Shown here in pieces: positions 23,001 through 38,735 of a stretch of 64,000 nucleotides of DNA. The stretch's first letter is position 1. Each line of letters begins with the position of its first letter. Origin of the DNA: Saccostrea echinata (Eukaryota); contig NW_026889771.1 in NCBI RefSeq assembly GCF_033153115.1, positions 7,006,001 through 7,070,000 of the forward strand, in the 5' to 3' direction. Under the pieces are notes generated by a model that worked only from the letters and a program-made list of their open reading frames with translations, did no database searches and was not told where the DNA came from. Position numbers and translations under genes: made by a program.

Positions 23001-24438
23001 AACCTACTGAGTCATAATTTGAGCAATCTTAGACCTACACGAAGGAAGTCACAATTCTTGGATAAGTGGCGCCAAAGAAGATATCTAATGATGCCCTCTA
23101 ATCTTCAACATTTCTTACTTGTTTCCCTTGGAAAAGGTCTATAAGCTTCGTAGTAAGCTTGATTAAAATTCTGTTGAAGAAATTCAACAAAAAAAATATT
23201 TCAGTAATAAACACATACACACATATACATGTATAAGCCAGAGAAACTCTGATCAGAAAAGCTTATTTTACCCATCAACTTCAGACTTAAAAAATAACAT
23301 TCAGTATATTGCATAGCTTTAAGGTTTTACTCAGCAGTCAGTTTGAGGTATTGTTTTATGCAATACTTTGTAAAATATTAATGTAAGAAAGAAAATTCTA
23401 CATTTTTGTTGATAGCTGAAAAAGACCACATGATAACTACAGATGAAAATATTGAATGACCACTAAACTCTATCATGCAACAACAAAAATTAATGACACA
23501 TGCTGTTATAGACCCCTGCAAAATGAGGGTATATATATGGATGATTTTTATGGAATAAATAGCACCTTGAAAAAAATGTTCCACACATTATGCCTCTTTT
23601 AATACAACCATTAAATAATGCAGTCCTTTTCTATGGTCCACAACAATAACAAAATACTAGTACTATTAAAACAACAATCAAACACAAAGTCAAGTAAAGA
23701 AAAATCTTTTGGCAGCTGTGTTTAAGCTATTTGGCCATCTAGTTCTGTAAGAAACAGGAGGAGATACAACCTTAAATGTAAATATTTCAACCTGCAACAG
23801 TTTTGCTGTTGTTATAATGTACTTCTAAAAAAAATATATCTGAAAAAACAGGAAAAAATGCACAATCAAGTTGTTGTTGTAAATTAAAAAGATATTTTCT
23901 CCTTCATGTTCCTACATTTAAAGCACTAGGGAAAAAATATATCAATATACATACTAAAAAAAAGACAGACTGGCCCAGTAGTCATGTCCTTTGTTCAGAT
24001 TGTTTTTGTGTGCATAAATGGCGATTCAATGGTCATCAGTTCTTCTATCAATGGCTTTGATCTATAAATAACTTTCGTAAAATTGTGCTTTAACTGGTCT
24101 GAACTTTGAATTAGTTTTAATAACTTTTGCATTACTCTCCATCTAAATCATTTGAAAGATTGCTTTAAAGCTTCAGAAAACCTGTTGTAATATTTTTTTT
24201 AAATTAAAAAATACCATTTTCTATTTCATTCTTGGAAAATATACATTATAAAAATACACTACATCAGAATAATCATGATTTATAAATAGACTTAACATTT
24301 ATCAGAGAGTATCTATAATGTTTAACGTTTTATTCTATCGGTGTATATCTTTCTAATGAAAAAAATTTTTTGGCACAGCCTACATGTATCTAGGTAAAAA
24401 ACATAAAGAATAAATAATTCTTCTCATTAAGACATCTT

Positions 24439-25451
24439 CTACTCATAGATGATGACTTCACCATCGGAAGAATCTGAGTCTTCCTCCACCTCACTTTCAC
24501 TACTAGAGGTGTCCTGGTTTTCTCTGATTGGCAGCAGAATTTTCTCTGGGAGATCTTCATGTTCATCCTTCTTCTCCTCTTCAACTTTCTCTTCCTTCGG
24601 CGGTGGGACATTGACATATTTGTGTGTTGTAAGGAAGGTACTCTCCTCCTTTGAGACTGTCTCATCTTTTGTGCTGGAGGGTGATGGTTCTGGAACATCC
24701 TCAGTATCTGTCCCCTGCTCTGGGATGGACAAAGACAATTTCTGGTCACATCTTTTCAAACTGTCTACACGGGACATTTTGTGCTCTTGACCAGCTCTTT
24801 GAATGGCAATGGTGGCTTGCATGTCAATCATGGCATATTCAATGGAAGTAGACTTCTGCATTTTAAGGGACTTTTGGGAAGATTTTCTGCTTTTACGAGT
24901 GGGCTTGTCACGAAGGTCAATCTCAGCATAATTTAACTGACGTTCTAGTTGCTCTGCTGGAAGAGAAAGTGACTGTGAAAATGGGGGTGATGAAGGTGGC
25001 GTCAGGTCAATGTTCATGTATGACATTTTGTGAGAACCAGTTCTTTCTGAAAATTTTGAGTGCATACTCTCTGAACGAGAAAACTTTGGTAAATTGGGAG
25101 AATCTCTTTCCCTACTGAAAGAGCTGAACTGGGACACTTGATCAAAAGTAAACACACTGGAATTCACCGAGGGAGAATGGGGAGTTTGTGAGGGACTAGA
25201 ACTGAGACTTTCATTAAGTGGTCGCTTCCTCTCCAAAACTATGTAGCAATTGCCTGCTCTTGGTCTCATATAAGTGTAGGCTGGACTATTCCGTAATGCA
25301 CTCTCACTGCTAACACTGTCAGAATAGGAAGACAGTGAAATTTCATCATCAGAGGGGCTGTCATGGTCTAACTCTACAACTACTGCTGTGGATCTAGATT
25401 CCTGGTCCTCCACAGTGCTGCTAACAGATGCAGGTGATCCTTCCTTCACTG
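24439..25451 (-). CDS. DOK7: Dok-7-like terminal exon 8 (Ser-rich, tandem pTyr motif, acidic tail)
   Basis: Acceptor TTGTAG| at 25452, phase 1. Open to TAG at 24439. Contains LNYAEIDL and IEYAMIDMQAT. Confidence 0.85.
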
Positions 25452-28400
25452 CTACAATTAGAATTCATTAATATAAATAGATATTCATCAACATTTAATA
25501 TATCTCAAGACTTCCAAATACATTGAATAAAACATTATTACAATAGAACACAATATCAAATTGAAATTTTAAAAAGAAGGGACTTATGGATAAAATGACA
25601 TACCTTGTCTTGGCACCCATACCGATTCTTCTGCTTCTTCTCCAGGTTTAACATCATCTTGGTCACTGGGAGCAATCAGAGCATAGCTGTGCTCTGATCT
25701 GAATGAGGAAACACTCTTATTATCTAAAGTATTATCATCTTTCCAGACTTCCTCTTTCCCAAGAGAAGGGGCACTTTCCAAAACGGGGGACAATGCAGAA
25801 GATGGGTAGCTCTTTTGCTTTGGAGGTATAAATGGTGGTAATGAAGCTACATACTTTGCGATGGCTGCTGCTTCCTCATAGGGTGAAAAAGCCTTTTTGG
25901 GACACATATTCAACTTAAAATCATCAGATTTCAATGAATTAGTTTTTTCAGAATCTGTGTCCCCATAGTAGTCCTTCACCTTTGAATATTTCATGAGGTC
26001 AATTAATTTTTCATCATCTGTTTTGCTAGAGGTCTGACACAGTGGCATTTTATAAGAAGGCTCATCCACTCTTAAAACTGTAAAAATTCCCATCTCCTGT
26101 GTTTTGCGAAATTTTTGAAAAGATTTTGGAGACAAACACTTTCCCTCTGATTTATTTTTTGATGCTGATTCCTCTGAATCTGTCTGTCCATCACAAGGTC
26201 CTGTGTACCCAGTTCTATTAGTAGAACTGGATTCACAACTTTCTGTGTCCTTTGTCTGTGCTGACTGCTTTGGTCCAATCAAGTGACTGTGTTCATCAGT
26301 GGTCCCATTGGAGTAAAATGAATCTTGTGAAGTTTGATGAAAATTGTCTTTGGAAGCATTCAAGTTCATTTCCATAAAACTAGACCTGTTTGGAAAGCTA
26401 GAGGATCGTCTTCTTTCCATTATTTCAGTCTGACTTTGACCACCACTGCTACTGTTTGTAGAAGCTACACTTGATGTTGAAATGTCCTTCCCATTTGTAT
26501 TATCTCTGCTGACATAAATGTTGGATAGGGTTTTGTCTAGGCAACTTTCACTTGAACTTGAGTTCAAAAGATTTTCTTGACTCTGAGACATGCTTTTCCT
26601 GTTCCCTGAATTTCTACGTATCAATCTTGTTAGAAATCCGGGACTTTTTCCTGAATTTTCAGTACTTTTTTCACTATTTATAGATTGCACTGATGTTGCA
26701 CTGGCACTTTTATGAACATCCTGAGAACTTGTTAGATTATTGTGTTTCTGAAAGTTGATCAAGTTTGGGAAAGGCAAAGAAGACTTCCCCTTCAAGATTT
26801 CTTTGGTATTTTCATCAGATGTATTTTGTTTTGATGGTTCTTCTTCAGAATTGCGTCTGGAGATTTTTGGTGAAGCCGAGGAGTCGTCACCCTCAACGAC
26901 AGAGTCTCTAATTGCTGGGGTATTGCTTACAAAACTTTTCAGGGACTGTAGGTTTTCGAGCACAGATTTCTTTGGACTAGTGAGATGATGCATAAGTAAG
27001 TAGTTTTCCTCTCTGACTGGTGTATTTGGAGTGTCAGTTAAACTGAGTGAATGCTGAAACACTGGTCTGGAGAATAGATTTTCAGAGATAGAGGAAGCAC
27101 TGCTGGATCTTGTGTACACTTTTTGAGGAGAGGATTTACAAGATTCTACCTCATCTTTGGATTTCATTGTCACCCTTTCATCTTCGAACATTCCACTCAT
27201 ATCCATATACCCACAAGTGTCATCAGGGTTTAGATTTTCCTTCCCAGCTGCAGAAGGAGATCGTTTAGGCAGCCTCACTTTCAGTGGCCCATCCTTATAA
27301 TCAGACAGCTCTGATGAACTTCCTCTTGGTGTATGCAGTCCCACTTCAGATCGTCTTCTGCTGCTTGGTGATGAATCAACTCCAGCCATTAAGAAGTAAT
27401 TTTGCTCTCTTTTTGGATTCATTACTGGGTTAATGCCTTGTCGTGGACTTGAATATTGTGAGGAATACTTGTTTCTTTTAGTCAGATGAGCTCTGTGCCT
27501 GCCTGGAGGAACAGGAGGTGGACAAAGGGGTCTACTCTTACTCAGAAGAGCTGGTCCTTTAGGAGGCAGTGCTGGTGGTTGTAAAGAAGCTTCTATGGCA
27601 GCATAGTCATTTGCGTAAATGCACTCTGTGTTTGCATAGTTTGATTCAGGGAGATCAATAGAAATTTTATGAGATTCTCTATCAGTCCTTTTCCCATAAC
27701 CCATCTTAGCTTTGGTGCTCGTGAGATCTTTAGGAGATTTTGATTCACTGTCATAACTTCTCTGGGAGATGATACTGCAGGTGTCATCATCTGACTGATT
27801 CCTAACATACACATGACATTTATCCACCTGTACACCTCCATCATACTTGTCCAAGTTGACATAAGGAAGAGGAGCAGACATTTTGGAATGAGAGGGTATT
27901 TTGCGTAACCTTGACACCAGATTGGGACTCAACAACACACTGTCTGAATAACCTGAAATACTACCCTGTGAACTTATGGTAGAGTATCGATCATTTCGGG
28001 GACTGAGTGTGGCACGGCGGTAATTTTTGGACTTTTTCCTAGGTAAAGGTGGTGGTTTTTCTTTCAGGACATCCTGGTTTTTCCCTGAAGGCTTTTCTTT
28101 TACACCCTGGAATAAAATACATGTAATGTTAAAAGTATTTAAAAATTAAAATTCTTTCTGAATGCTGTGACAATGCATCGATATCTTTTGTCTGAAGGTT
28201 CAATAACTTTGATAATTTAAATATCAATTTCTTATAAATATGAAATATATAATTTGACATCAATGGTGCAAGTCCAAACAATTTATTCATATTGCATATT
28301 AAGCAGAAAAGTTATAGTTGTCATTTGTAGATTCAGTTTATGACTTGTGACTTAGCCTAAACTACACTTCATTTTAAAAAGGCAATATAATAAGAATACA

Positions 28401-31400
28401 AACAGTTAATATTTTAATGGTACAAGGAAAGTGCTTATGCAAGTAGCTACTTTTGAAATCAAACATGTTACTTGCTAATTTTTTTTAAACTTCTGCCACA
28501 TGCAGTTTCTTTTAATTCTGCTTACCTTCATGATTTCTTCTAACAGGCTTATCTCCCTTTGTAGCTCTTGCTCTGACTTTTGAAGATTTTCAAGCTCTAG
28601 CCTCCTACAACTCTCCGACTCCTCCTCAATTCTAGATGGCACTGAGGTAACAGACAATGACTTGCTGTCCTCACGATTACAGCTATAAACACCATAGCCA
28701 CAAAGGGAGGGAGCACTGGCCGACACTTTCACCATCTGTCCCAGAGTGGACATAGAATTGTCCCCCGAGGATATACTCATCTGAGAATCGGAACTCGGTC
28801 CACTAGCAGAGCTCATACAGGCCTCAGTCTCAATCCACTGTTCAATTCTGTTGTCTACACATTCTTTGCTGAGTTTATGAGACAAAATATTTGAGACATT
28901 TTTAACTTCCTGAGAGTTTGGAGATAAGAAATGGGCTGGCTGTTGAAAATGTTTGGTATTAAGATATAGACTACAATTATCCACTTTCCTTACACGGCTA
29001 GGAGGTACATCATACAGCAAGTATTTAAAGTATTTTCTTTTCTCTGATTCTAGTTCATTTTTGTATTTCAGGAGCTTTTCATTGTAAGCAGATGCATGGG
29101 AAAAATCAGTAAAACTCAGAGAGTGGCGCTTGGATCTCTTATCATCCAGGTAGGATTGTTCTCCAGCAGTTGTCCAGCTTTGGAAGTCTCTGAACTGGTT
29201 GTTGTCATTAAAAGAACTGCTGACGGGCTCCAAATGGTAGTCACACAGTTGAGATCCTACAGAGAGCAAAATAAGACTAATCTTAGGGAAAAAACCTTTT
29301 ACTTGAATAAATTATTCTCCAAGTCATACGAAGCTATTCAGCATGACACTGGCAATTTAAAGTTATGTAACTAAAAACATCAGTGTTAAATCTGTGATTT
29401 TTAAAACATATATTGAATTCTTTTATAATAAACTTTTTAACTTCAAGAAAATCATAAAATTATGTGAACAATTTACGAAAAAAATTTGTTTCAATATTAG
29501 CCCACAATATAAATAAAATGTACTTTTCACCAACAATTACCAAAGGCAACGAATAATTTCTAACACCTACTTCTTTTAATGGATTTCCTACAGCTGGCAG
29601 TCTTTCCCTGGCTCGCTAGGCTGACAATTTCATTAATCAATTCAGCTTGTTCTGAGGAGATAGCATGAACTCCTGCCCCTTTAACAAATTTAAAAAAAAA
29701 TACAATTTGTCTTATCTCTGAAAAAAAATGATGTTGATAAATATACATGACGAAAGCTTTAAAATGCTTTAATTTGAGGCCAATAAAATACATCATTACA
29801 GTTAACATGTCAACTCATTTGGTGTACATCAATCCAAAAATAATATAAACCTAAGTATGTGGTACATGCACGTATGTATAATGGATTAATGCTACATGAT
29901 TGAAGAAATACAAATTTTTCCCAACCTTTTCCACAGTTAGATCCTCCTTCAAATATGAACTTTTTTTCTACCACGCCAAATCTTCGTAAATCTGAGATCT
30001 GCCAGGCAGCCAAGACTTTTGGAGGGATTCCGTTCGTCAGGCAGAACTTCTGACCATGAATGTGCATTCGGAGAAAGTCCAAAGGGAGCTTACTGTTGTT
30101 GGGGACATTAGTAACTTGTACTTTAAACTGGTCCTCTACAAAATCAAAGCAAAATATATAGAAATTTCTTATGAATTTTTCTCCATCCCTTGAGCAATGA
30201 GAACATTTACAGCAAACAAAAAACAAAACAAAAAAAAAACAATGCTTATATCAAATGTTGAAGGATGAAAGTCATCATCATATAAAGAATTCTTTTAAAG
30301 ACAGCTTCCCTACAAAGTATAAGACTTGCCTTGTTACTGTCATAAAATTATTAAGGACAGCTCCAGCTTTATATATATATATATGACTGTGTGCTACCTC
30401 AATGCACTAGATTTAATATGGCATGGTACAACCAATAAATCTGCACTTTTTATACGATAATGTAATTGAGGATGTTTTTCAATTCATAAAACAAATTTAG
30501 CTGTGCACTTTTTTGATTCTAATGATATGTCATACTTTTAAGAAGGAAAAGCACTTAATTTTATTTCGATATAAACAGCTCCAGTATGCCATTTCTAATC
30601 TTTCTCACAAGACACATCCTGTTATTTTTGTGAATGAATCTCCAGTTCTATTTGCTTTTTAAGATTTCTTCCCTGTGACTCTGCACTTATAGAAGAGTAC
30701 AGAAGACACAACATCACAAGGTCATTTGCTATTGTGTGAACAGTTAATCTGTCAACTTTCTGTTGTGTTTCCTGTGAGCAATACTTCTAAGAGCAACAAG
30801 AGACATCTTTAGAAACACTTGACATCTTGTATATTTCAATACTGCTTTTTGAAAATAAACTGTCAAATTCAGCATATGCTGTAACAAGTACTCATACATA
30901 TAAAATGTCCTAAAAGATATATTTTGAATTATAAAAAAATGAGTATTTTACTTTAAATTAATTCATAACAGAAATTCCAAACTTTTGATACCTTCCCCAA
31001 GACTTCTTCTGATCTTGATCTCGAACTGTATCAGGTTATCCCTGTTTTCAAAAGAAAAGAGTGTGATTTGTTTCTGACAGATGATGGCTAAGACATTGGC
31101 CTCCTTGTCGTAGCTGAACCCTGTCTCCACACCAAAAAACCCTTCCAGATTAAAGTTCGTTTTGGGCTGTCGCTTGTGGACATCCTTAACATCCACCTTA
31201 TATAGCTGTACATTGAGCTGATCTGAAAAACATAATCAACATTTGGTCACAGATTTAGTGATTTGTGTGTGTCGAGTCACGTCTTTTGTGTGTACAAACA
31301 TCATGTTTCTTTGTTTTTGTGTCTGAAAGTTATCCTGTTTGTGTTTGAGATGAAAATTTATTGTTTTTAAAGATAAAAAACAACTTAAGTGGGAGAAAGA

Positions 31401-37400: not shown

Positions 37401-38735
37401 TTCAAACAAGATTGTGAAACAGCTGTTCCTGTTGTTTGTGGCATAATTAGATCAGGGGCTCTGTGCGATACCAAGTCCTAGACTTGTGTCGAAATTTGAA
37501 GACTTCCAGTTCCTGCTTTTCTTCAAAATGTTTGCAAACAAAAAGTGTTAACCCAGATTAACCAGCAGTCTTTGGTAAGACCTTTTTTTCTCAAAGATGC
37601 AGAATATTTCCGGCAAAAAGGCAGTATTTTTCAACCAATTACAAAGAATGCTGAAGAAAACCCTATCCTCTCAGACTTTTTTTTTAAACATTTGAAGGAA
37701 ATCTTTTAATTTGCCTTAATTCCCATACAAGATTTTCATTATTTCTGCAACTGAAAAGTCTGTTACAATTTCCGCAATCAGCTCCTAACACACTCGAGAC
37801 AGGACACTCTGTCTGTTACTGATAAAGTTTAATGACCAATACCAAGTAGCAGAATTAATTTTTTTTTTGTTTTTAACAAGATACAACTTATGAAGGAATT
37901 TCCTGTTTCTTTCATATTAAGCATTATTATTTGTCTCTTTTCAAGAGAAAACAAAACATGGGTTCTGTCACATTACCATGCTGTTATACACCCAATATTA
38001 AATATATTTAGCTTACAAATTAAAAAAAAAAACAGAGAAAAGAAAAATAATGAACTTAAAAAAACTTTTTAAATAGACATAAAATAAAACCACGAATACT
38101 GATCCCTTCCGACCCGATCCCTTCTGCATTTATGGACAAGTGACAGATAAAGTTTTTGGAAGTCATGAGTTTTGTTTACTCATTCCACATGTTATGAATT
38201 ATAACTGTGTTGGGTTAGTATAACCCAGTCTCTGTTTCCTGAATCAACATGACTAAAAGATTATCTTTTTCAGGAGTGTGTCAAAAATCAATGTGTTTCC
38301 GTGGCATCTAAAACCTCCAACTGAGTTCCAAAACTTCCGATTACAAGGGACAAACTCAAAGGATGAAACACCTTTACAAACATTGCTTTTAAAGAAACTG
38401 CGAATGCGATTTTGAGAATTTTATGCCATAGACAATTAAACAAATGGTTGAAAACAAGACATTTTGTTAATAAAAGATATACGCCATTTCCCTGATAAAC
38501 TATACGGTGTTGACATAACCCCTTTTTAAAAACATAACAAAAAGTTTACTCACCAGCTACGGGAGAAGGTTTTCTTAACACACACCAGCGCCTTTTCCAC
38601 TAAAAGAACATACACTTTCATTAACGAAACACAATCTAAAAATTCGCAAAATAAAACTATGACAGCAATGTTTACCTTTTTTCCATCCCGATATTTCACT
38701 CTGCCCTCTGTCACAATACAGCTTACATCCGACAT
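24439..38735 (-). CDS. DOK7: Dok-7-like PH-PTB docking protein, 8 coding exons, 1633 aa: 38735-38676, 38599-38554, 31222-30992, 30135-29926, 29678-29571, 29256-28526, 28106-25604, 25451-24439
   Basis: Spliced N-terminus MSDVSCIVTEGRVKYRDGKK|WKRRWCVLRKPSPVA|DQLNVQLYK..KIRRSLGE|EDQF..PPKVLAAWQISDLRRFGVVEKKFIFEGGSNCGK|GAGV matches the Dok-7 PH and IRS-type PTB signature (EGQVKLRDGKKWKSRWLVLRKPSPVAD; WKLSDLRRYG; FIFEGGTRCG). All seven introns are GT-AG and phase-compatible; total 4902 nt. The exon 5 donor is the least certain boundary. Confidence 0.88.
25604..28106 (-). CDS. DOK7: Dok-7-like exon 7 (2503 nt, disordered Ser/Pro-rich region with YxN and YxxM motifs)
   Basis: Acceptor TTCCAG| at 28107 and donor CAAG|GTATGT at 25603. 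Contains the 784-aa ORF. Confidence 0.87.
28526..29256 (-). CDS. DOK7: Dok-7-like exon 6 (ends in a predicted coiled coil)
   Basis: Acceptor CTCTCTGTAG| at 29257 and donor AAG|GTAAG at 28525. Lies within the 264-aa ORF. Confidence 0.85.
29571..31222 (-). CDS. DOK7: Dok-7-like exons 3-5 (PH C-terminal part and PTB): 31222-30992, 30135-29926, 29678-29571
   Basis: Canonical splice sites, all phase 1. PTB motif WQISDLRRFG..FIFEGG. Confidence 0.88.
38554..38735 (-). CDS. DOK7: Dok-7-like exons 1-2 (38735-38676, 38599-38554) separated by a 76-nt intron
   Basis: ATG in CCAACATG context; donor AAG|GTAAA, acceptor TTTTAG|TGG, donor CTG|GTGAGT. Encodes EGRVKYRDGKK|WKRRWCVLRKPSPVA. Confidence 0.9.

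What the first reader, a model, noticed from the sequence alone, without database searches (positions are those of the whole stretch)
24781..24936. Dok-7 PH-PTB head joined to an FRS2/Gab-type tandem SHP2-binding motif
Seen: the last exon encodes LNYAEIDL...IEYAMIDMQATIAIQRA, with the two tyrosines about 31 residues apart. Established: this pattern matches the C-terminal bis-tyrosine SHP2-activation motif of FRS2 (LNYIQVDL..LYAVIDIERTAAM) and Gab/DOS. Vertebrate Dok-7 (~500 aa) signals mainly through Crk YxxP sites. Inference: this 1633-aa protein may be a composite or ancestral RTK scaffold that couples a Dok-7-type receptor-binding module directly to SHP2/MAPK output.
Basis: partly seen in the sequence, partly recalled or inferred. 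Interest (0 to 1): 0.78.

Follow-up and report, generated by a model that had tools for sequence, protein, structure and literature searches.

The report
Oyster Dok-7 with Gab1-like SHP2-docking tail
An oyster gene encodes a giant relative of the muscle-synapse adaptor Dok-7, and its tail ends in a deeply conserved pair of tyrosine motifs that most resembles the site where the adaptor Gab1 docks and switches on the phosphatase SHP2.

Summary
Window 24781-24936 (minus strand) encodes LNYAEIDL, 23 residues, then IEYAMIDMQATIAIQRAGQEH. The tyrosines are 31 residues apart, in the last of 8 exons of a 1633-codon gene.

Spliced contigs from four public runs join exons 3 to 8 through canonical introns. 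The head is Dok-7-type: PDB Dok-7 E 3.4e-38, next best Dok-5 at 2e-3, and no IRS-1 chain.

In 65 aligned sequences the only invariant columns are the two tyrosines and one aspartate. Named carriers are molluscs, annelids, a brachiopod, a nemertean and an electric-eel Dok-7. A profile of this module searched against the whole PDB returns one hit: the Gab1 617-684 fragment solved bound to the SHP2 tandem SH2 domains (E 0.0065). The same genome encodes a SHP2 orthologue.

The protein is not a composite. The pair looks ancestral to the Dok-7 family and is still present in a fish Dok-7, so the contrast with "vertebrate Dok-7" is too sharp.

Phosphorylation, SHP2 binding and MAPK output are inferred, not shown. 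I found no paper describing this. The scan had not noted it on other DNA. It is a new variant of a known kind.

The parts
38676..38735 (-). Exon 1. Start codon at 38733-38735. Encodes MSDVSCIVTEGRVKYRDGKK, the start of the Dok-7-type PH domain.
   Evidence: Sequence with donor AAG|gtaaac. tblastn block aa 1-20 of P0018, 90% identity. Not covered by read laying.
38554..38599 (-). Exon 2 (WKRRWCVLRKPSPVA), after a 76-base first intron (38600-38675).
   Evidence: Acceptor ttttag| and donor G|gtgagt read. tblastn block. Not covered by read laying.
30992..31222 (-). Exon 3, the rest of the PH domain.
   Evidence: tblastn block aa 35-112, 96% identity. The loose end of contigs at 30137 reads the same 30 letters as window 30994-31023. 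The upper boundary is inferred from frame and AG only.
29926..30135 (-). Exon 4, first part of the PTB domain (…WQISDLRRFGVVEKKFIFEGGSNCGKG).
   Evidence: PDB phmmer: Dok-7 3ml4 E 1.6e-11. Pfam IRS-type PTB E 0.0014. Joint 29677->29925 (cut +1) seen in 4 of 4 runs. Upper end.
29571..29678 (-). Exon 5, end of the PTB domain.
   Evidence: Joints 29255->29570 (3 of 4 runs) and 29677->29925 (4 of 4 runs), both CT..AC on the + strand. tblastn block.
28526..29256 (-). Exon 6, start of the tail. Holds the invariant YDVPP (29000-29014), a Crk-SH2-type site.
   Evidence: Joints. tblastn 93% identity. Y300 of P0018 is invariant in 8 of 8 mollusc orthologues. Coordinates. YDVPP is printed as a Crk site of p130Cas.
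25604..28106 (-). Exon 7, the long tail exon. Holds PLPYVNL (27852-27872), IYAN (27609-27620), three YxxM sites NYFLM (27387-27401), GYMDM (27198-27212) and NYLLM (26991-27005), and the proline-rich PPALPPKGPALL (27543-27578).
   Evidence: Joints 25451->25604 and 28105->28525. 13 homologues found. The tyrosines listed are invariant in 8 of 8 orthologues. Coordinates.
24439..25451 (-). Exon 8, the last exon, with the stop codon at 24439-24441.
   Evidence: ORF. Joint in X1, X2 and X3. Homologues. It is the only match to the module profile in the whole own genome.
24913..24936 (-). First tyrosine motif, LNYAEIDL (Tyr codon 24928-24930). Proposed ligand of the SHP2 N-SH2 domain.
   Evidence: In 65 sequences: Y 65, L/I/V at -2 in 64, N at -1 in 61, A at +1 in 58, I/L/V/M at +3 in 65, D at +4 in 64, L at +5 in 51. 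It fits the printed PTPN11_N matrix pY-phi-x-phi-[D/E]-phi.
24844..24912 (-). Basic, serine-rich linker of 23 residues between the motifs.
   Evidence: Tyr-Tyr spacing in 65 sequences: minimum 21, median 29, maximum 59, and 23-37 in 59 of 65.
24751..24843 (-). Second tyrosine motif, IEYAMIDM (Tyr codon 24835-24837), with its conserved 25-residue extension …QATIAIQRAGQEHKMSRVDSLKR. Proposed ligand of the SHP2 C-SH2 domain.
   Evidence: In 65 sequences: Y 65, I/T/V at -2 in 64, A/S/T at +1 in 65, I at +3 in 64, D at +4 in 65, A at +7 in 62, T at +8 in 63, A at +10 in 60, H at +18 in 59, R at +22 in 60. It aligns to Gab1 pY659 and the residues after it.
24598..24621 (-). KYVNVPPP, a Grb2-SH2-type Y-x-N site near the C-terminus.
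   Evidence: It aligns with YVNIP of the eel Dok-7. GRB2 matrix pY-[V/E]-N is printed. The site is present in the oysters and Pinctada but not in all orthologues.

Best explanation
The finding is the C-terminal output module of the oyster orthologue of Dok-7. Dok-7 is a PH-PTB adaptor that binds an activated receptor tyrosine kinase. Here the head is followed by about 1400 residues of tail. The tail carries conserved docking tyrosines: YDVPP for Crk, YVNL/YVNV for Grb2 and three YxxM for PI3K p85. It ends in two tyrosine motifs about 30 residues apart.

Most likely mechanism: after the kinase phosphorylates both tyrosines, the first motif (L-N-pY-A-E-I-D-L) binds the N-SH2 domain of the SHP2 orthologue and the second ([I/T/V]-E-pY-A-x-I-D-M…) binds its C-SH2 domain. 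This is how the Gab1 pY627/pY659 motif works. Binding would recruit the phosphatase to the receptor complex and hold it open.

Shown: one spliced gene, a Dok-7-type head, extreme conservation of the pair, significant similarity to the solved Gab1-SHP2 ligand, and a SHP2 gene in the same genome.

Inferred: phosphorylation, SHP2 binding, and whether the outcome is MAPK activation (as for Gab1 and FRS2) or a brake on the receptor (as SHP2 acts on MuSK).
For: Gene and transcript:
- Intron-skipping contigs with GT..AG ends give four clean joints, seen in 3, 3, 3 and 4 of 4 runs. The e4-e3 joint is supported by a loose end.
- The exon ends sum to 1633 codons in 8 blocks.

Head:
- P0018 against the PDB gives Dok-7 3ml4 at E 3.4e-38 over residues 7-199. 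Dok-5 is next at 2e-3 and FRS3 at 0.11. No IRS-1 chain appears at E<=1.
- The window's own PTB exon gives Dok-7 at 1.6e-11.

Conservation:
- 4 of 4 word-search hits carry both motifs, as do all 9 longer mollusc proteins.
- The tail profile finds 115 proteins at E<=1e-3.
- In 65 aligned exon-8-type sequences the invariant columns are Y174, Y205 and D209 only.

SHP2 fit:
- The -2/+1/+3/+5 hydrophobic pattern and the acidic +4 match the printed N-SH2 requirements.
- The median spacing is 29 and the window's is 31. Gab1's is 32 (Y627/Y659).
- The profile against 177,635 PDB sequences at E<=10 returns one hit, Gab1 617-684, at E 0.0065, aligned across both tyrosines. That chain is the bis-phosphorylated ligand in the complex with SHP2 1-222.

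Partner:
- A gene with two SH2 exons and a PTP exon lies at G000:C54, about 42.912-42.925 Mb.
- Its exons hit PTPN11 at 2.5e-39 and 5e-38, better than SHP-1 at about 1e-29 and 1e-26.
- It keeps the Gly-Val of the N-SH2 helix that explains the -2 preference.

Vertebrate link:
- The eel Dok-7 (P0126) is hit by the profile at 3.7e-4 and by pairwise BLASTP at 1e-11 across both motifs.
- P0126 matches the Dok-7 structure at 5.6e-29.
Against: - No phosphorylation, binding or activity data exist for any member.
- The Gab1 match is short and borderline (E 0.0065). It could reflect convergence on the same SH2 domains, or shared composition of two short motifs.
- The printed matrix pY-phi-x-phi-[D/E]-phi is shared by SHB, SHD, SHE, SHF and MIST SH2 domains, so sequence alone does not single out SHP2.
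- Conservation runs about 25 residues past the second tyrosine. That is more than an SH2 contact is known to need, even though Gab1 was modelled to +13. The module may do something further or different.
- Heterobranch gastropods have a changed second motif, with His or Phe at +5.
- No single contig runs from the PTB exon to exon 8. X1 has a 36-base hole in exon 6 that is bridged only by contigs of other runs.
- X1-X3 are labelled RNA only by a guess.
Confidence: 0.6

Rival explanations
1. The two phosphotyrosines dock other SH2 proteins rather than SHP2. Candidates are a Shb-family adaptor, PLC-gamma, RasGAP, SHIP or Csk. They could also recruit two different partners, one per site.
For: The peptide-array matrices printed give the same pY-phi-x-phi-[D/E]-phi preference for SHB, SHD, SHE, SHF and MIST as for PTPN11_N. 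The FRS2 Y436 and IRS-1 Y1179 peptides also bound PLC-gamma C-SH2, RasGAP N-SH2 and Shb-family domains there.
Against: - The pair, with its constrained spacing (23-37 residues in 59 of 65 sequences), suits a tandem-SH2 reader.
- The hydrophobic -2 residue, kept in 64 of 65 sequences at both sites, is described as a peculiarity of SHP2.
- The only PDB match is the SHP2-bound Gab1 ligand.
Confidence: 0.2
2. The module is not a phosphotyrosine switch. It is a folded or helix-forming peptide that binds a partner or the protein's own head without phosphorylation, and the tyrosines are structural.
For: Conservation extends to +25 after the second tyrosine, with near-invariant A, T, A, H and R positions. 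That is unusual for a plain SH2 site.
Against: - The only invariant residues in 65 sequences are the two tyrosines and the +4 aspartate.
- Both sites repeat the same SH2-type pattern.
- The linker between them varies freely in sequence and length, from 21 to 59 residues, as expected for two linear motifs and not for a domain.
Confidence: 0.1
3. The protein is an IRS/chico-type insulin-receptor substrate, as UniRef names the Owenia orthologue. The pair would then be the IRS-type SHP2 site, not a Dok-7 feature.
For: - PH plus IRS-type PTB head with weak Pfam hits.
- Three invariant YxxM sites.
- UniRef name 'Protein chico' for P0076.
- The Atlas feature search puts an 'Insulin receptor substrate 2' cluster first for two module queries, at scores of 0.82 and 0.78. 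That is lead level only.
Against: - P0018 and P0076 hit the Dok-7 structure at 3.4e-38 and 6.1e-39. No IRS-1 chain is hit at E<=1 for P0018 or E<=0.01 for P0076.
- The N-terminal sequence and the 76-base first intron follow Dok-7.
- The tail module is shared with an eel protein that matches the Dok-7 structure itself.
Confidence: 0.03
4. The model is a mis-join or a lineage-specific fusion: exon 8 belongs to a neighbouring gene.
For: No single contig spans from the PTB exon to exon 8. NCBI's Pinctada model P0008 lacks the head.
Against: - Overlapping spliced contigs chain exons 3 to 8 in frame.
- Fifteen stored full-length proteins carry both a head and the pair. Thirteen are flagged by the regex, and P0076 and P0135 were read. 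They cover bivalves, gastropods, a cephalopod and an annelid.
- The exon lengths sum to an open 1633-codon frame.
Confidence: 0.02

Closest known systems
Gab1 bisphosphoryl tyrosine-based activation motif (pY627/pY659), solved with SHP2 1-222 in PDB 9qcd
   Same: Both have two tyrosines about 30 residues apart (32 in Gab1, 31 here) at the C-terminal end of a PH-domain docking protein. The first lies in a x-Y-phi-x-phi-D-L context. The second lies in (I/V)-(E/D)-Y-(A/V)-x-(I/V)-D followed by x-x-x-T-x-A. This is the only PDB sequence matched by the module profile (E 0.0065). Gab1 pY627 is assigned to the N-SH2 domain and pY659 to the C-SH2 domain.
   Different: The head is a Dok-7-type PH-PTB, not the Gab PH alone. 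The extension after the second tyrosine is longer and much more conserved here. Homology by descent is not shown. Binding is untested.
Vertebrate Dok-7 (MuSK adaptor; PH-PTB structure 3ml4)
   Same: The PH-PTB head aligns over about 190 residues (E 3.4e-38). There is a Crk-type Y-D-(V/I)-P site in the tail (the eel has HYDIP). The eel Dok-7 carries the same C-terminal pair.
   Different: The oyster protein is 1633 aa, with a tail about 1400 residues long carrying YxxM and YxN sites. The mammalian protein is recalled as about 500 aa and described as signalling through Crk sites (passage on Dok7 Y406 and Hallock 2010). Whether mammals keep the terminal module was not tested here.
FRS2 (SNT-1) C-terminal SHP2 sites
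   Same: The printed FRS2 Y436 peptide RQLNpYIQVDLE and the window's ERQLNYAEIDLR share R-Q-L-N-Y-x-x-(I/V)-D-L. Both are PTB-headed, membrane-proximal receptor substrates that also carry Grb2 YxN sites.
   Different: FRS2 has a myristoylated PTB without a PH domain. Its PTB is a weak match to this head (E 0.28-0.34).
IRS-1 / chico
   Same: PH plus IRS-type PTB head, multiple YxxM sites, and a tandem SHP2 site. The printed IRS-1 peptides are NGLNpYIDLDLV and LSApYASISFQK, and the tandem site binds the tandem SH2 domains at nanomolar affinity.
   Different: The head does not match IRS-1 structures. IRS-1 spacing is 50 residues by the printed numbering (1179/1229). Its second site lacks the I-D-M-x-A-T pattern.
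PD-1 ITIM-ITSM pair
   Same: The first site fits (I/V/L)xYxx(I/V/L). The second has T, I or V at -2. ITIM goes to the N-SH2 domain and ITSM to the C-SH2 domain, giving full SHP2 activation.
   Different: PD-1 is a transmembrane receptor tail and not an adaptor. No sequence match to it appeared even at E<=10.

Membership tests
Dok-7 family | N-terminal PH-PTB unit closest to Dok-7 rather than to Dok1-6, FRS2/3 or IRS | tested here: met
   P0018: 3ml4 at E 3.4e-38, against Dok-5 at 2e-3, FRS3 at 0.11, Dok-1 at 0.8, and no IRS-1 chain. Window PTB exon: Dok-7 at 1.6e-11 against Dok-5 at 1.8e-3. This is a similarity ranking, not a tree.
Dok-7 family | Phylogenetic placement of the PTB with Dok-7 | not tested
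No tree was built.
Dok-7 family | Tail tyrosines in Y-x-x-P context for the Crk/CrkL SH2 domain | tested here: met
   YD(V/I)PP is invariant in 8 of 8 mollusc orthologues and present in 20 of 28 long proteins listed. The eel has EYQVP and HYDIP. Binding was not tested.
Dok-7 family | PTB arginines that hold the receptor's phosphotyrosine (role recalled, not checked in print) | tested here: inconclusive
   The Arg-Arg of DLRRYG is kept as DLRRFG. The Arg of GGTRCG aligns to Asn in the window and P0018. It is Arg in Mizuhopecten, Solemya and Owenia, Lys in Haliotis and Ser in Argopecten.
Dok-7 family | Binds and activates MuSK by dimerisation | not testable with these tools
   No partner kinase was sought in the genome.
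Dok-7 family | Tail homology with a vertebrate Dok-7 | tested here: met
   Eel 'Docking protein 7' P0126: profile E 3.7e-4 and BLASTP 1e-11 over 119 residues including both motifs. P0126 matches 3ml4 at 5.6e-29. This is one vertebrate only.
SHP2-activating bis-tyrosine motif (BTAM: Gab1, IRS-1, FRS2, PD-1) | Two tyrosines, each with hydrophobic residues at -2, +1, +3 and +5 as the SHP2 SH2 domains require | tested here: met
   Residue counts in 65 sequences against the printed requirements.
SHP2-activating bis-tyrosine motif (BTAM: Gab1, IRS-1, FRS2, PD-1) | Spacing that lets one chain reach both SH2 pockets | tested here: met
   31 residues in the window. Median 29, range 21-59. Gab1 is 32. 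IRS-1 is 50 by printed numbering.
SHP2-activating bis-tyrosine motif (BTAM: Gab1, IRS-1, FRS2, PD-1) | Sequence similarity to an experimentally defined BTAM | tested here: met
   The sole PDB hit of the profile is 9qcd_C, Gab1 617-684, at E 0.0065.
SHP2-activating bis-tyrosine motif (BTAM: Gab1, IRS-1, FRS2, PD-1) | A SHP2-type tandem-SH2 phosphatase in the same organism | tested here: met
   G000:C54 has SH2, SH2 and PTP exons on one strand within 12 kb. PTPN11 is the best hit at 2.5e-39 and 5e-38.
SHP2-activating bis-tyrosine motif (BTAM: Gab1, IRS-1, FRS2, PD-1) | Both tyrosines phosphorylated; bis-phosphopeptide binds and activates SHP2 | not testable with these tools
   This needs biochemistry. 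It is the defining functional feature and remains open.
IRS / chico | PH-PTB head of the IRS type | tested here: not met
   No IRS-1 chain is matched by P0018 at E<=1 or by P0076 at E<=0.01. Pfam IRS-PTB scores 21.6 bits, under the 22-bit cut-off, in P0018. That model also covers Dok and FRS2 PTBs.

The most novel reading that the evidence does not exclude
The C-terminal tyrosine pair is the ancestral output module of the whole Dok-7 family. It is related by descent to the Gab1 SHP2-activation motif, kept from lophotrochozoans to teleost fish, and lost from (or not recognised in) the mammalian protein. SHP2 is known only as an indirect brake on MuSK signalling at the neuromuscular junction. 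On this reading it was originally docked straight onto Dok-7 and still is in fish. Ancestral Dok-7 would then have been a Gab/IRS-class multi-output scaffold (Crk, Grb2, PI3K, SHP2) and not a dedicated kinase activator.
Probability: 0.3. Interest if true: 0.75.

Novelty: new variant of a known kind. Interest (0 to 1): 0.6.

Why it matters
Dok-7 is studied almost only as the small mammalian activator of MuSK, and its loss causes congenital myasthenia. SHP2 is known to restrain MuSK signalling (review passages). No direct Dok-7-SHP2 link appeared in the papers I could search.

A pair of SHP2-type tyrosines is conserved more strictly than anything else in the tail, from molluscs and annelids to a fish Dok-7. 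That suggests a direct link and a much broader ancestral role for Dok-7.

The idea can be tested at once with a phosphopeptide and recombinant SH2 domains. It also gives a reason to re-examine the 3' end of vertebrate DOK7 genes.

It adds a fourth docking-protein family (after Gab, FRS2 and IRS) with this motif. That bears on whether the motif is ancient or was invented repeatedly.

Tried and rejected
- **Pfam on the exon ORFs.** No family for exon 8 and only a sub-threshold PTB hit for exon 4. Pfam on whole orthologues gave only weak PH and IRS-PTB hits.
- **Contigs behind P0001 and P0002.** I used read laying instead.
- **Atlas searches.** These gave leads only: 'Insulin receptor substrate 2' at 0.82 and 0.78, and chordate 'Dok-7' clusters of 625-698 aa by structure at TM 0.47-0.53 on a poor model. 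I draw no conclusion from them.
- **Taxon names.** Organism names were found for 14 of the 30 proteins looked up. The other 16 are unnamed Logan, ENA or JGI fragments, so the range outside Lophotrochozoa and one fish is unknown. I cannot say whether ecdysozoans, cnidarians or other deuterostomes have the module.
- **Second copy in the own genome.** The search found only the window's own exon 8.
- **Rows left out of alignment A2.** Seven long proteins were left out: P0054, P0061, P0076, P0109, P0116, P0122 and P0125. All have the second motif. P0116 shows no first motif by my pattern. Four fragments were also left out. P0103 has both tyrosines. P0105 starts after the first motif. P0124 and P0127 match only upstream of the pair.
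- **Hypotheses rejected.** The mis-join and IRS/chico readings were considered and rejected, as set out under the rivals.
- **Literature.** Searches were Dok-7+invertebrate (18 papers), dok-7+mollus (2), Dok-7+SHP2 (19), Dok7+PTPN11 (22), dok7+musk+ortholog+invertebrate (9) and dok-7+gab1+frs2 (0). I saw the listings of these. I read passages of PMC5043372, PMC12445529, PMC8006230, PMC5666864, PMC13599456 and PMC11190576. None describes an invertebrate Dok-7 tail or a Dok-7 SHP2 motif. PMC2964755 and PMC2917201 are not held. The supplementary tables of PMC5043372, which used the Dok7 peptide in BLAST searches, might bear on invertebrate Dok-7.
- **Joined model.** The spliced model was searched exon by exon. 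I made no joined protein of the window's exons and used natural orthologue proteins from the databases instead.
Full report
**What is at the coordinates.** The gene lies on the minus strand. Window 24781-24936 translates to LNYAEIDLRDKPTRKSRKSSQKSLKMQKSTSIEYAMIDMQATIAIQRAGQEH. This sits inside ORF 24439..25449. The two tyrosines are residues 174 and 205 of that ORF, 31 apart.

In the near-identical orthologue P0018, an 8-residue pattern of the SHP2 N-SH2 type occurs exactly twice, at these two places. Shuffles of the same composition give 0.019 matches on average. A pair 20-60 residues apart was never seen in 20,000 shuffles.

**One gene, one transcript.**
- The upstream ORF 25584..27938 ends in a strong donor (caag|gtatgt). 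Exon 8 begins after tgtag|, in phase.
- I laid the contigs of four public runs on window 24400-30300. X1, X2 and X3 are at least 99% alike to the window. X8 is a relative and is recorded as RNA.
- The contigs skip 25452-25603 in X1, X2 and X3. X8 has a variant joint there, with 20 other letters between the sides.
- They also skip the next three introns: X1, X3 and X8 for the first, X1, X2 and X8 for the second, and all four runs for the third. All these introns have GT..AG ends on the minus strand.
- One X1 contig (4153 letters) carries exon 8, exon 7 and most of exon 6.
- Another X1 contig (816 letters) carries the rest of exon 6, exons 5 and 4, and 367 further letters. Its first 30 loose letters equal window 30994-31023, the end of exon 3.
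- The 36-base hole in exon 6 in X1 is bridged by an X2 contig and an X8 contig. No single contig spans everything.
- tblastn of the NCBI model for Saccostrea cucullata (P0018, 1632 aa) gives eight blocks at 82-97% identity.
- With the ends read, the exons sum to 4899 coding bases, or 1633 codons. I worked exon by exon and did not build a joined protein of the window.

**The head is Dok-7.**
- Exon 1 (MSDVSCIVTEGRVKYRDGKK) and exon 2 (WKRRWCVLRKPSPVA) are separated by a 76-base intron.
- P0018 matches the solved mouse Dok-7 PH-PTB (3ml4) at E 3.4e-38 over residues 7-199. The next hits are Dok-5 at 2e-3, FRS3 at 0.11, FRS2 at 0.28 and Dok-1 at 0.8. No IRS-1 chain appears up to E 1.
- The window's PTB exon alone gives Dok-7 at 1.6e-11.
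- Pfam sees only a sub-threshold IRS-type PTB and PH.
- This is a ranking by similarity and not a phylogeny, which I could not build.

**The tail and its tyrosines.**
- Word searches found close relatives of exons 7 and 8.
- With the Pinctada protein P0008 as query, they found full-length orthologues of 1562-1650 aa in Saccostrea, Mizuhopecten, Pecten, Ylistrum, Argopecten, Solemya and Haliotis.
- In eight full-length mollusc proteins, 12 of the 50 tyrosines of P0018 are invariant. They include YD(V/I)PP, PLPYVNL, IYAN, three YxxM and the C-terminal pair.
- By the printed SH2 matrices and peptides, these are Crk-, Grb2-, PI3K- and SHP2-type sites. The protein therefore looks like a Gab/IRS-class multi-site scaffold carrying a Dok-7 head.

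**How far the pair reaches.**
- A profile of the whole tail (1037 positions) was searched against 1.84 billion representatives. It gave 115 proteins at E<=1e-3, 92 at E<=1e-10 and 57 at E<=1e-30.
- I looked up 30 of them, and 14 carry organism names.
- Further bivalves: Potamilus, Dreissena.
- Gastropods: Nucella, Babylonia, Bulinus, Plakobranchus, Biomphalaria, Lottia.
- Cephalopod: Argonauta.
- Annelids: Owenia, Helobdella.
- Brachiopod: Lingula.
- Nemertean: Tubulanus.
- Vertebrate: electric eel, 'Docking protein 7'.
- The Owenia protein (2123 aa) has the Dok-7 head (E 6.1e-39) and the pair.
- The eel protein matches the Dok-7 structure in two pieces (E 5.6e-29). It aligns with the window's exon 8 at BLASTP 1e-11 across a YxN site and both motifs.
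- I aligned 65 exon-8-type sequences. The 11 rows left out are listed under Tried and rejected.
- The only invariant columns of the 964 are the two tyrosines and the aspartate at +4 of the second.
- First site: [L/I/V] at -2 in 64 of 65, N at -1 in 61, A at +1 in 58, E at +2 in 52, I at +3 in 55, D at +4 in 64, L at +5 in 51.
- Second site: [I/T/V] at -2 in 64, A/S/T at +1 in 65, I at +3 in 64, D at +4 in 65. It is followed by M-V-A-T-x-A-A-x-(R/K)-x-G-(K/R)-E-H-A-x-x-R-E-D.
- Spacing: minimum 21, median 29, maximum 59.

**What the pair resembles.**
- The same 65-sequence profile was searched against all 177,635 distinct PDB sequences with E up to 10. It returns a single chain: 9qcd_C, Gab1, 69 residues, E 0.0065, aligned over both tyrosines and the linker.
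- Passages of PMC12809435 identify 9qcd as human Gab1 617-684, phosphorylated on Tyr627 and Tyr659, bound to SHP2 1-222. Gab1 residues 624-634 and 653-672 are modelled.
- The review PMC12905495 (passages) gives these two tyrosines as the founding example of the bisphosphoryl tyrosine-based activation motif. It explains that binding of both SH2 domains holds SHP2 open.
- A preprint (10.1101/2022.06.29.498118, passage) lists Gab1 pY627 and IRS-1 pY1172 as N-SH2 ligands, and Gab1 pY659 and IRS-1 pY1229 as C-SH2 ligands.
- PMC3514216 (passages) prints FRS2 Y436 as RQLNpYIQVDLE, a PTPN11 N-SH2 binder. The window has ERQLNYAEIDLR. The same paper prints the N-SH2 matrix pY-phi-x-phi-[D/E]-phi.
- Another preprint (10.1101/2020.08.28.271809, passages) states that hydrophobic residues at +1, +3 and +5, and unusually at -2, are required. 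It also states that Leu at +5 is found in IRS-1, Gab1 and Gab2.
- Both motifs here meet these requirements. PD-1, SIRP-type and other tandem ITIM chains did not match the profile, so the likeness is specific to the Gab1 kind.

**The partner exists.**
- In the same genome, two SH2 matches and a phosphatase match lie on one strand within 12 kb at G000:C54, about 42.912-42.925 Mb.
- ORFs there hit PTPN11 at 2.5e-39 and 5e-38, ahead of SHP-1.
- The first SH2 exon keeps the Gly-Val that links to the -2 preference.

**Reading.** The most likely function is a phosphorylation-dependent, bivalent docking and activation site for the SHP2 orthologue, at the end of a Dok-7 scaffold.

- First, this is not a composite. 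The architecture is shared across Lophotrochozoa, and the module is also in a fish Dok-7, so it is probably ancestral to the family.
- Second, 'vertebrate Dok-7 lacks it' is not generally true. The short mammalian protein is my recollection and was not examined here.

The output is open. Gab1 and FRS2 use SHP2 to promote Ras-MAPK signalling, whereas at the vertebrate neuromuscular junction SHP2 dephosphorylates MuSK (PMC13599456 passages).

**What speaks against, or stays unexplained.**
- There are no binding or phosphorylation data.
- The Gab1 E-value is borderline, and convergence would give the same picture.
- The N-SH2 matrix is shared with Shb-family SH2 domains.
- Conservation runs to +25 after the second tyrosine, which SH2 binding alone does not explain.
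- Heterobranch snails changed the +5 residue of the second site.
- The Arg of the mouse GGTRCG loop aligns to Asn in this oyster.

**Novelty.** Databases hold these proteins as 'uncharacterized', 'protein Dok-7', 'Protein chico' or worse. Six literature searches and the passages I read gave no description of an invertebrate Dok-7 tail or of a SHP2-type motif in any Dok-7.

All the parts are of known kinds. The combination and its depth of conservation are new as far as I could see, so I class it as a new variant of a known kind, with interest 0.6.

Noticed in passing
window 29000-29014, 27852-27872, 27609-27620, 27387-27401, 27198-27212, 26991-27005, 24598-24621 (minus strand): Besides the pair, the tail holds YDVPP (Crk type), PLPYVNL and KYVNVPPP (Grb2 type), IYAN and three YxxM (PI3K p85 type). 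All but KYVNVPPP are invariant in 8 of 8 mollusc orthologues. The protein is built like a Gab/IRS scaffold.
   Followed up: partly
window 24751-24819 (minus strand): Conservation continues about 25 residues past the second tyrosine (A+7, T+8, A+10, H+18 and R+22 in at least 59 of 65 sequences). That is more than an SH2 contact is expected to need. It may be a helix or a second binding site.
   Followed up: partly
window about 29936-29938 (minus strand), exon 4: The arginine of the mouse Dok-7 GGTRCG loop aligns to Asn in this oyster and in Saccostrea cucullata. It is Arg in scallop, Solemya and Owenia, Lys in Haliotis and Ser in Argopecten. I recall this Arg as a phosphotyrosine contact of the PTB, but I could not check it in print.
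   Followed up: no
P0126 (electric eel 'Docking protein 7', 448 aa): This record matches the Dok-7 structure only at residues 5-44 and 183-223. The model or isoform therefore lacks the middle of the PH-PTB unit, yet it carries the full C-terminal pair and a YVNIP site.
   Followed up: partly
P0076 (Owenia fusiformis, 2123 aa): The annelid orthologue has 18 YxxM sites, including a run of near-identical SPNY(I/F)AMEP repeats, and three (R/K)YVNIP sites. This is a strong expansion of PI3K- and Grb2-type sites.
   Followed up: no
P0047, P0048, P0061 (Tubulanus): Some relatives have the first motif twice (NYAEIDL plus NYADMDL or NYAEMDL; NYAELDL plus NYADIDL), giving three tyrosines.
   Followed up: no
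database names of P0076, P0054, P0049 and cluster mates: Orthologues are named 'Protein chico', 'mediator of RNA polymerase II transcription subunit 1' and 'serine/arginine repetitive matrix protein 1' by their sources. These names do not fit the Dok-7 head or the tail.
   Followed up: partly
G000:C54:42912683-42924799 (minus strand); loci L001, L002: The SHP2/corkscrew orthologue of this oyster: two SH2 exons and the first phosphatase exons. Only these exons were read.
   Followed up: partly
G000, many contigs (C75, C48, C58, C17, C22 and others): The phosphatase family search gave 162 matches, with dense clusters of repeated tyrosine-phosphatase exons on several contigs. This suggests a large tandem expansion in this genome.
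   Followed up: no
window 25453-25629, run X8: The relative's contig joins exons 7 and 8 at a slightly different place, with 20 other letters between. This is probably sequence divergence at the exon 7 end rather than alternative splicing.
   Followed up: no
window about 39.3 kb and 58.9-59.1 kb: Runs of N (seen as X in ORF translations). They were left as they are. The first lies just upstream of exon 1, so the promoter region is incomplete.
   Followed up: no
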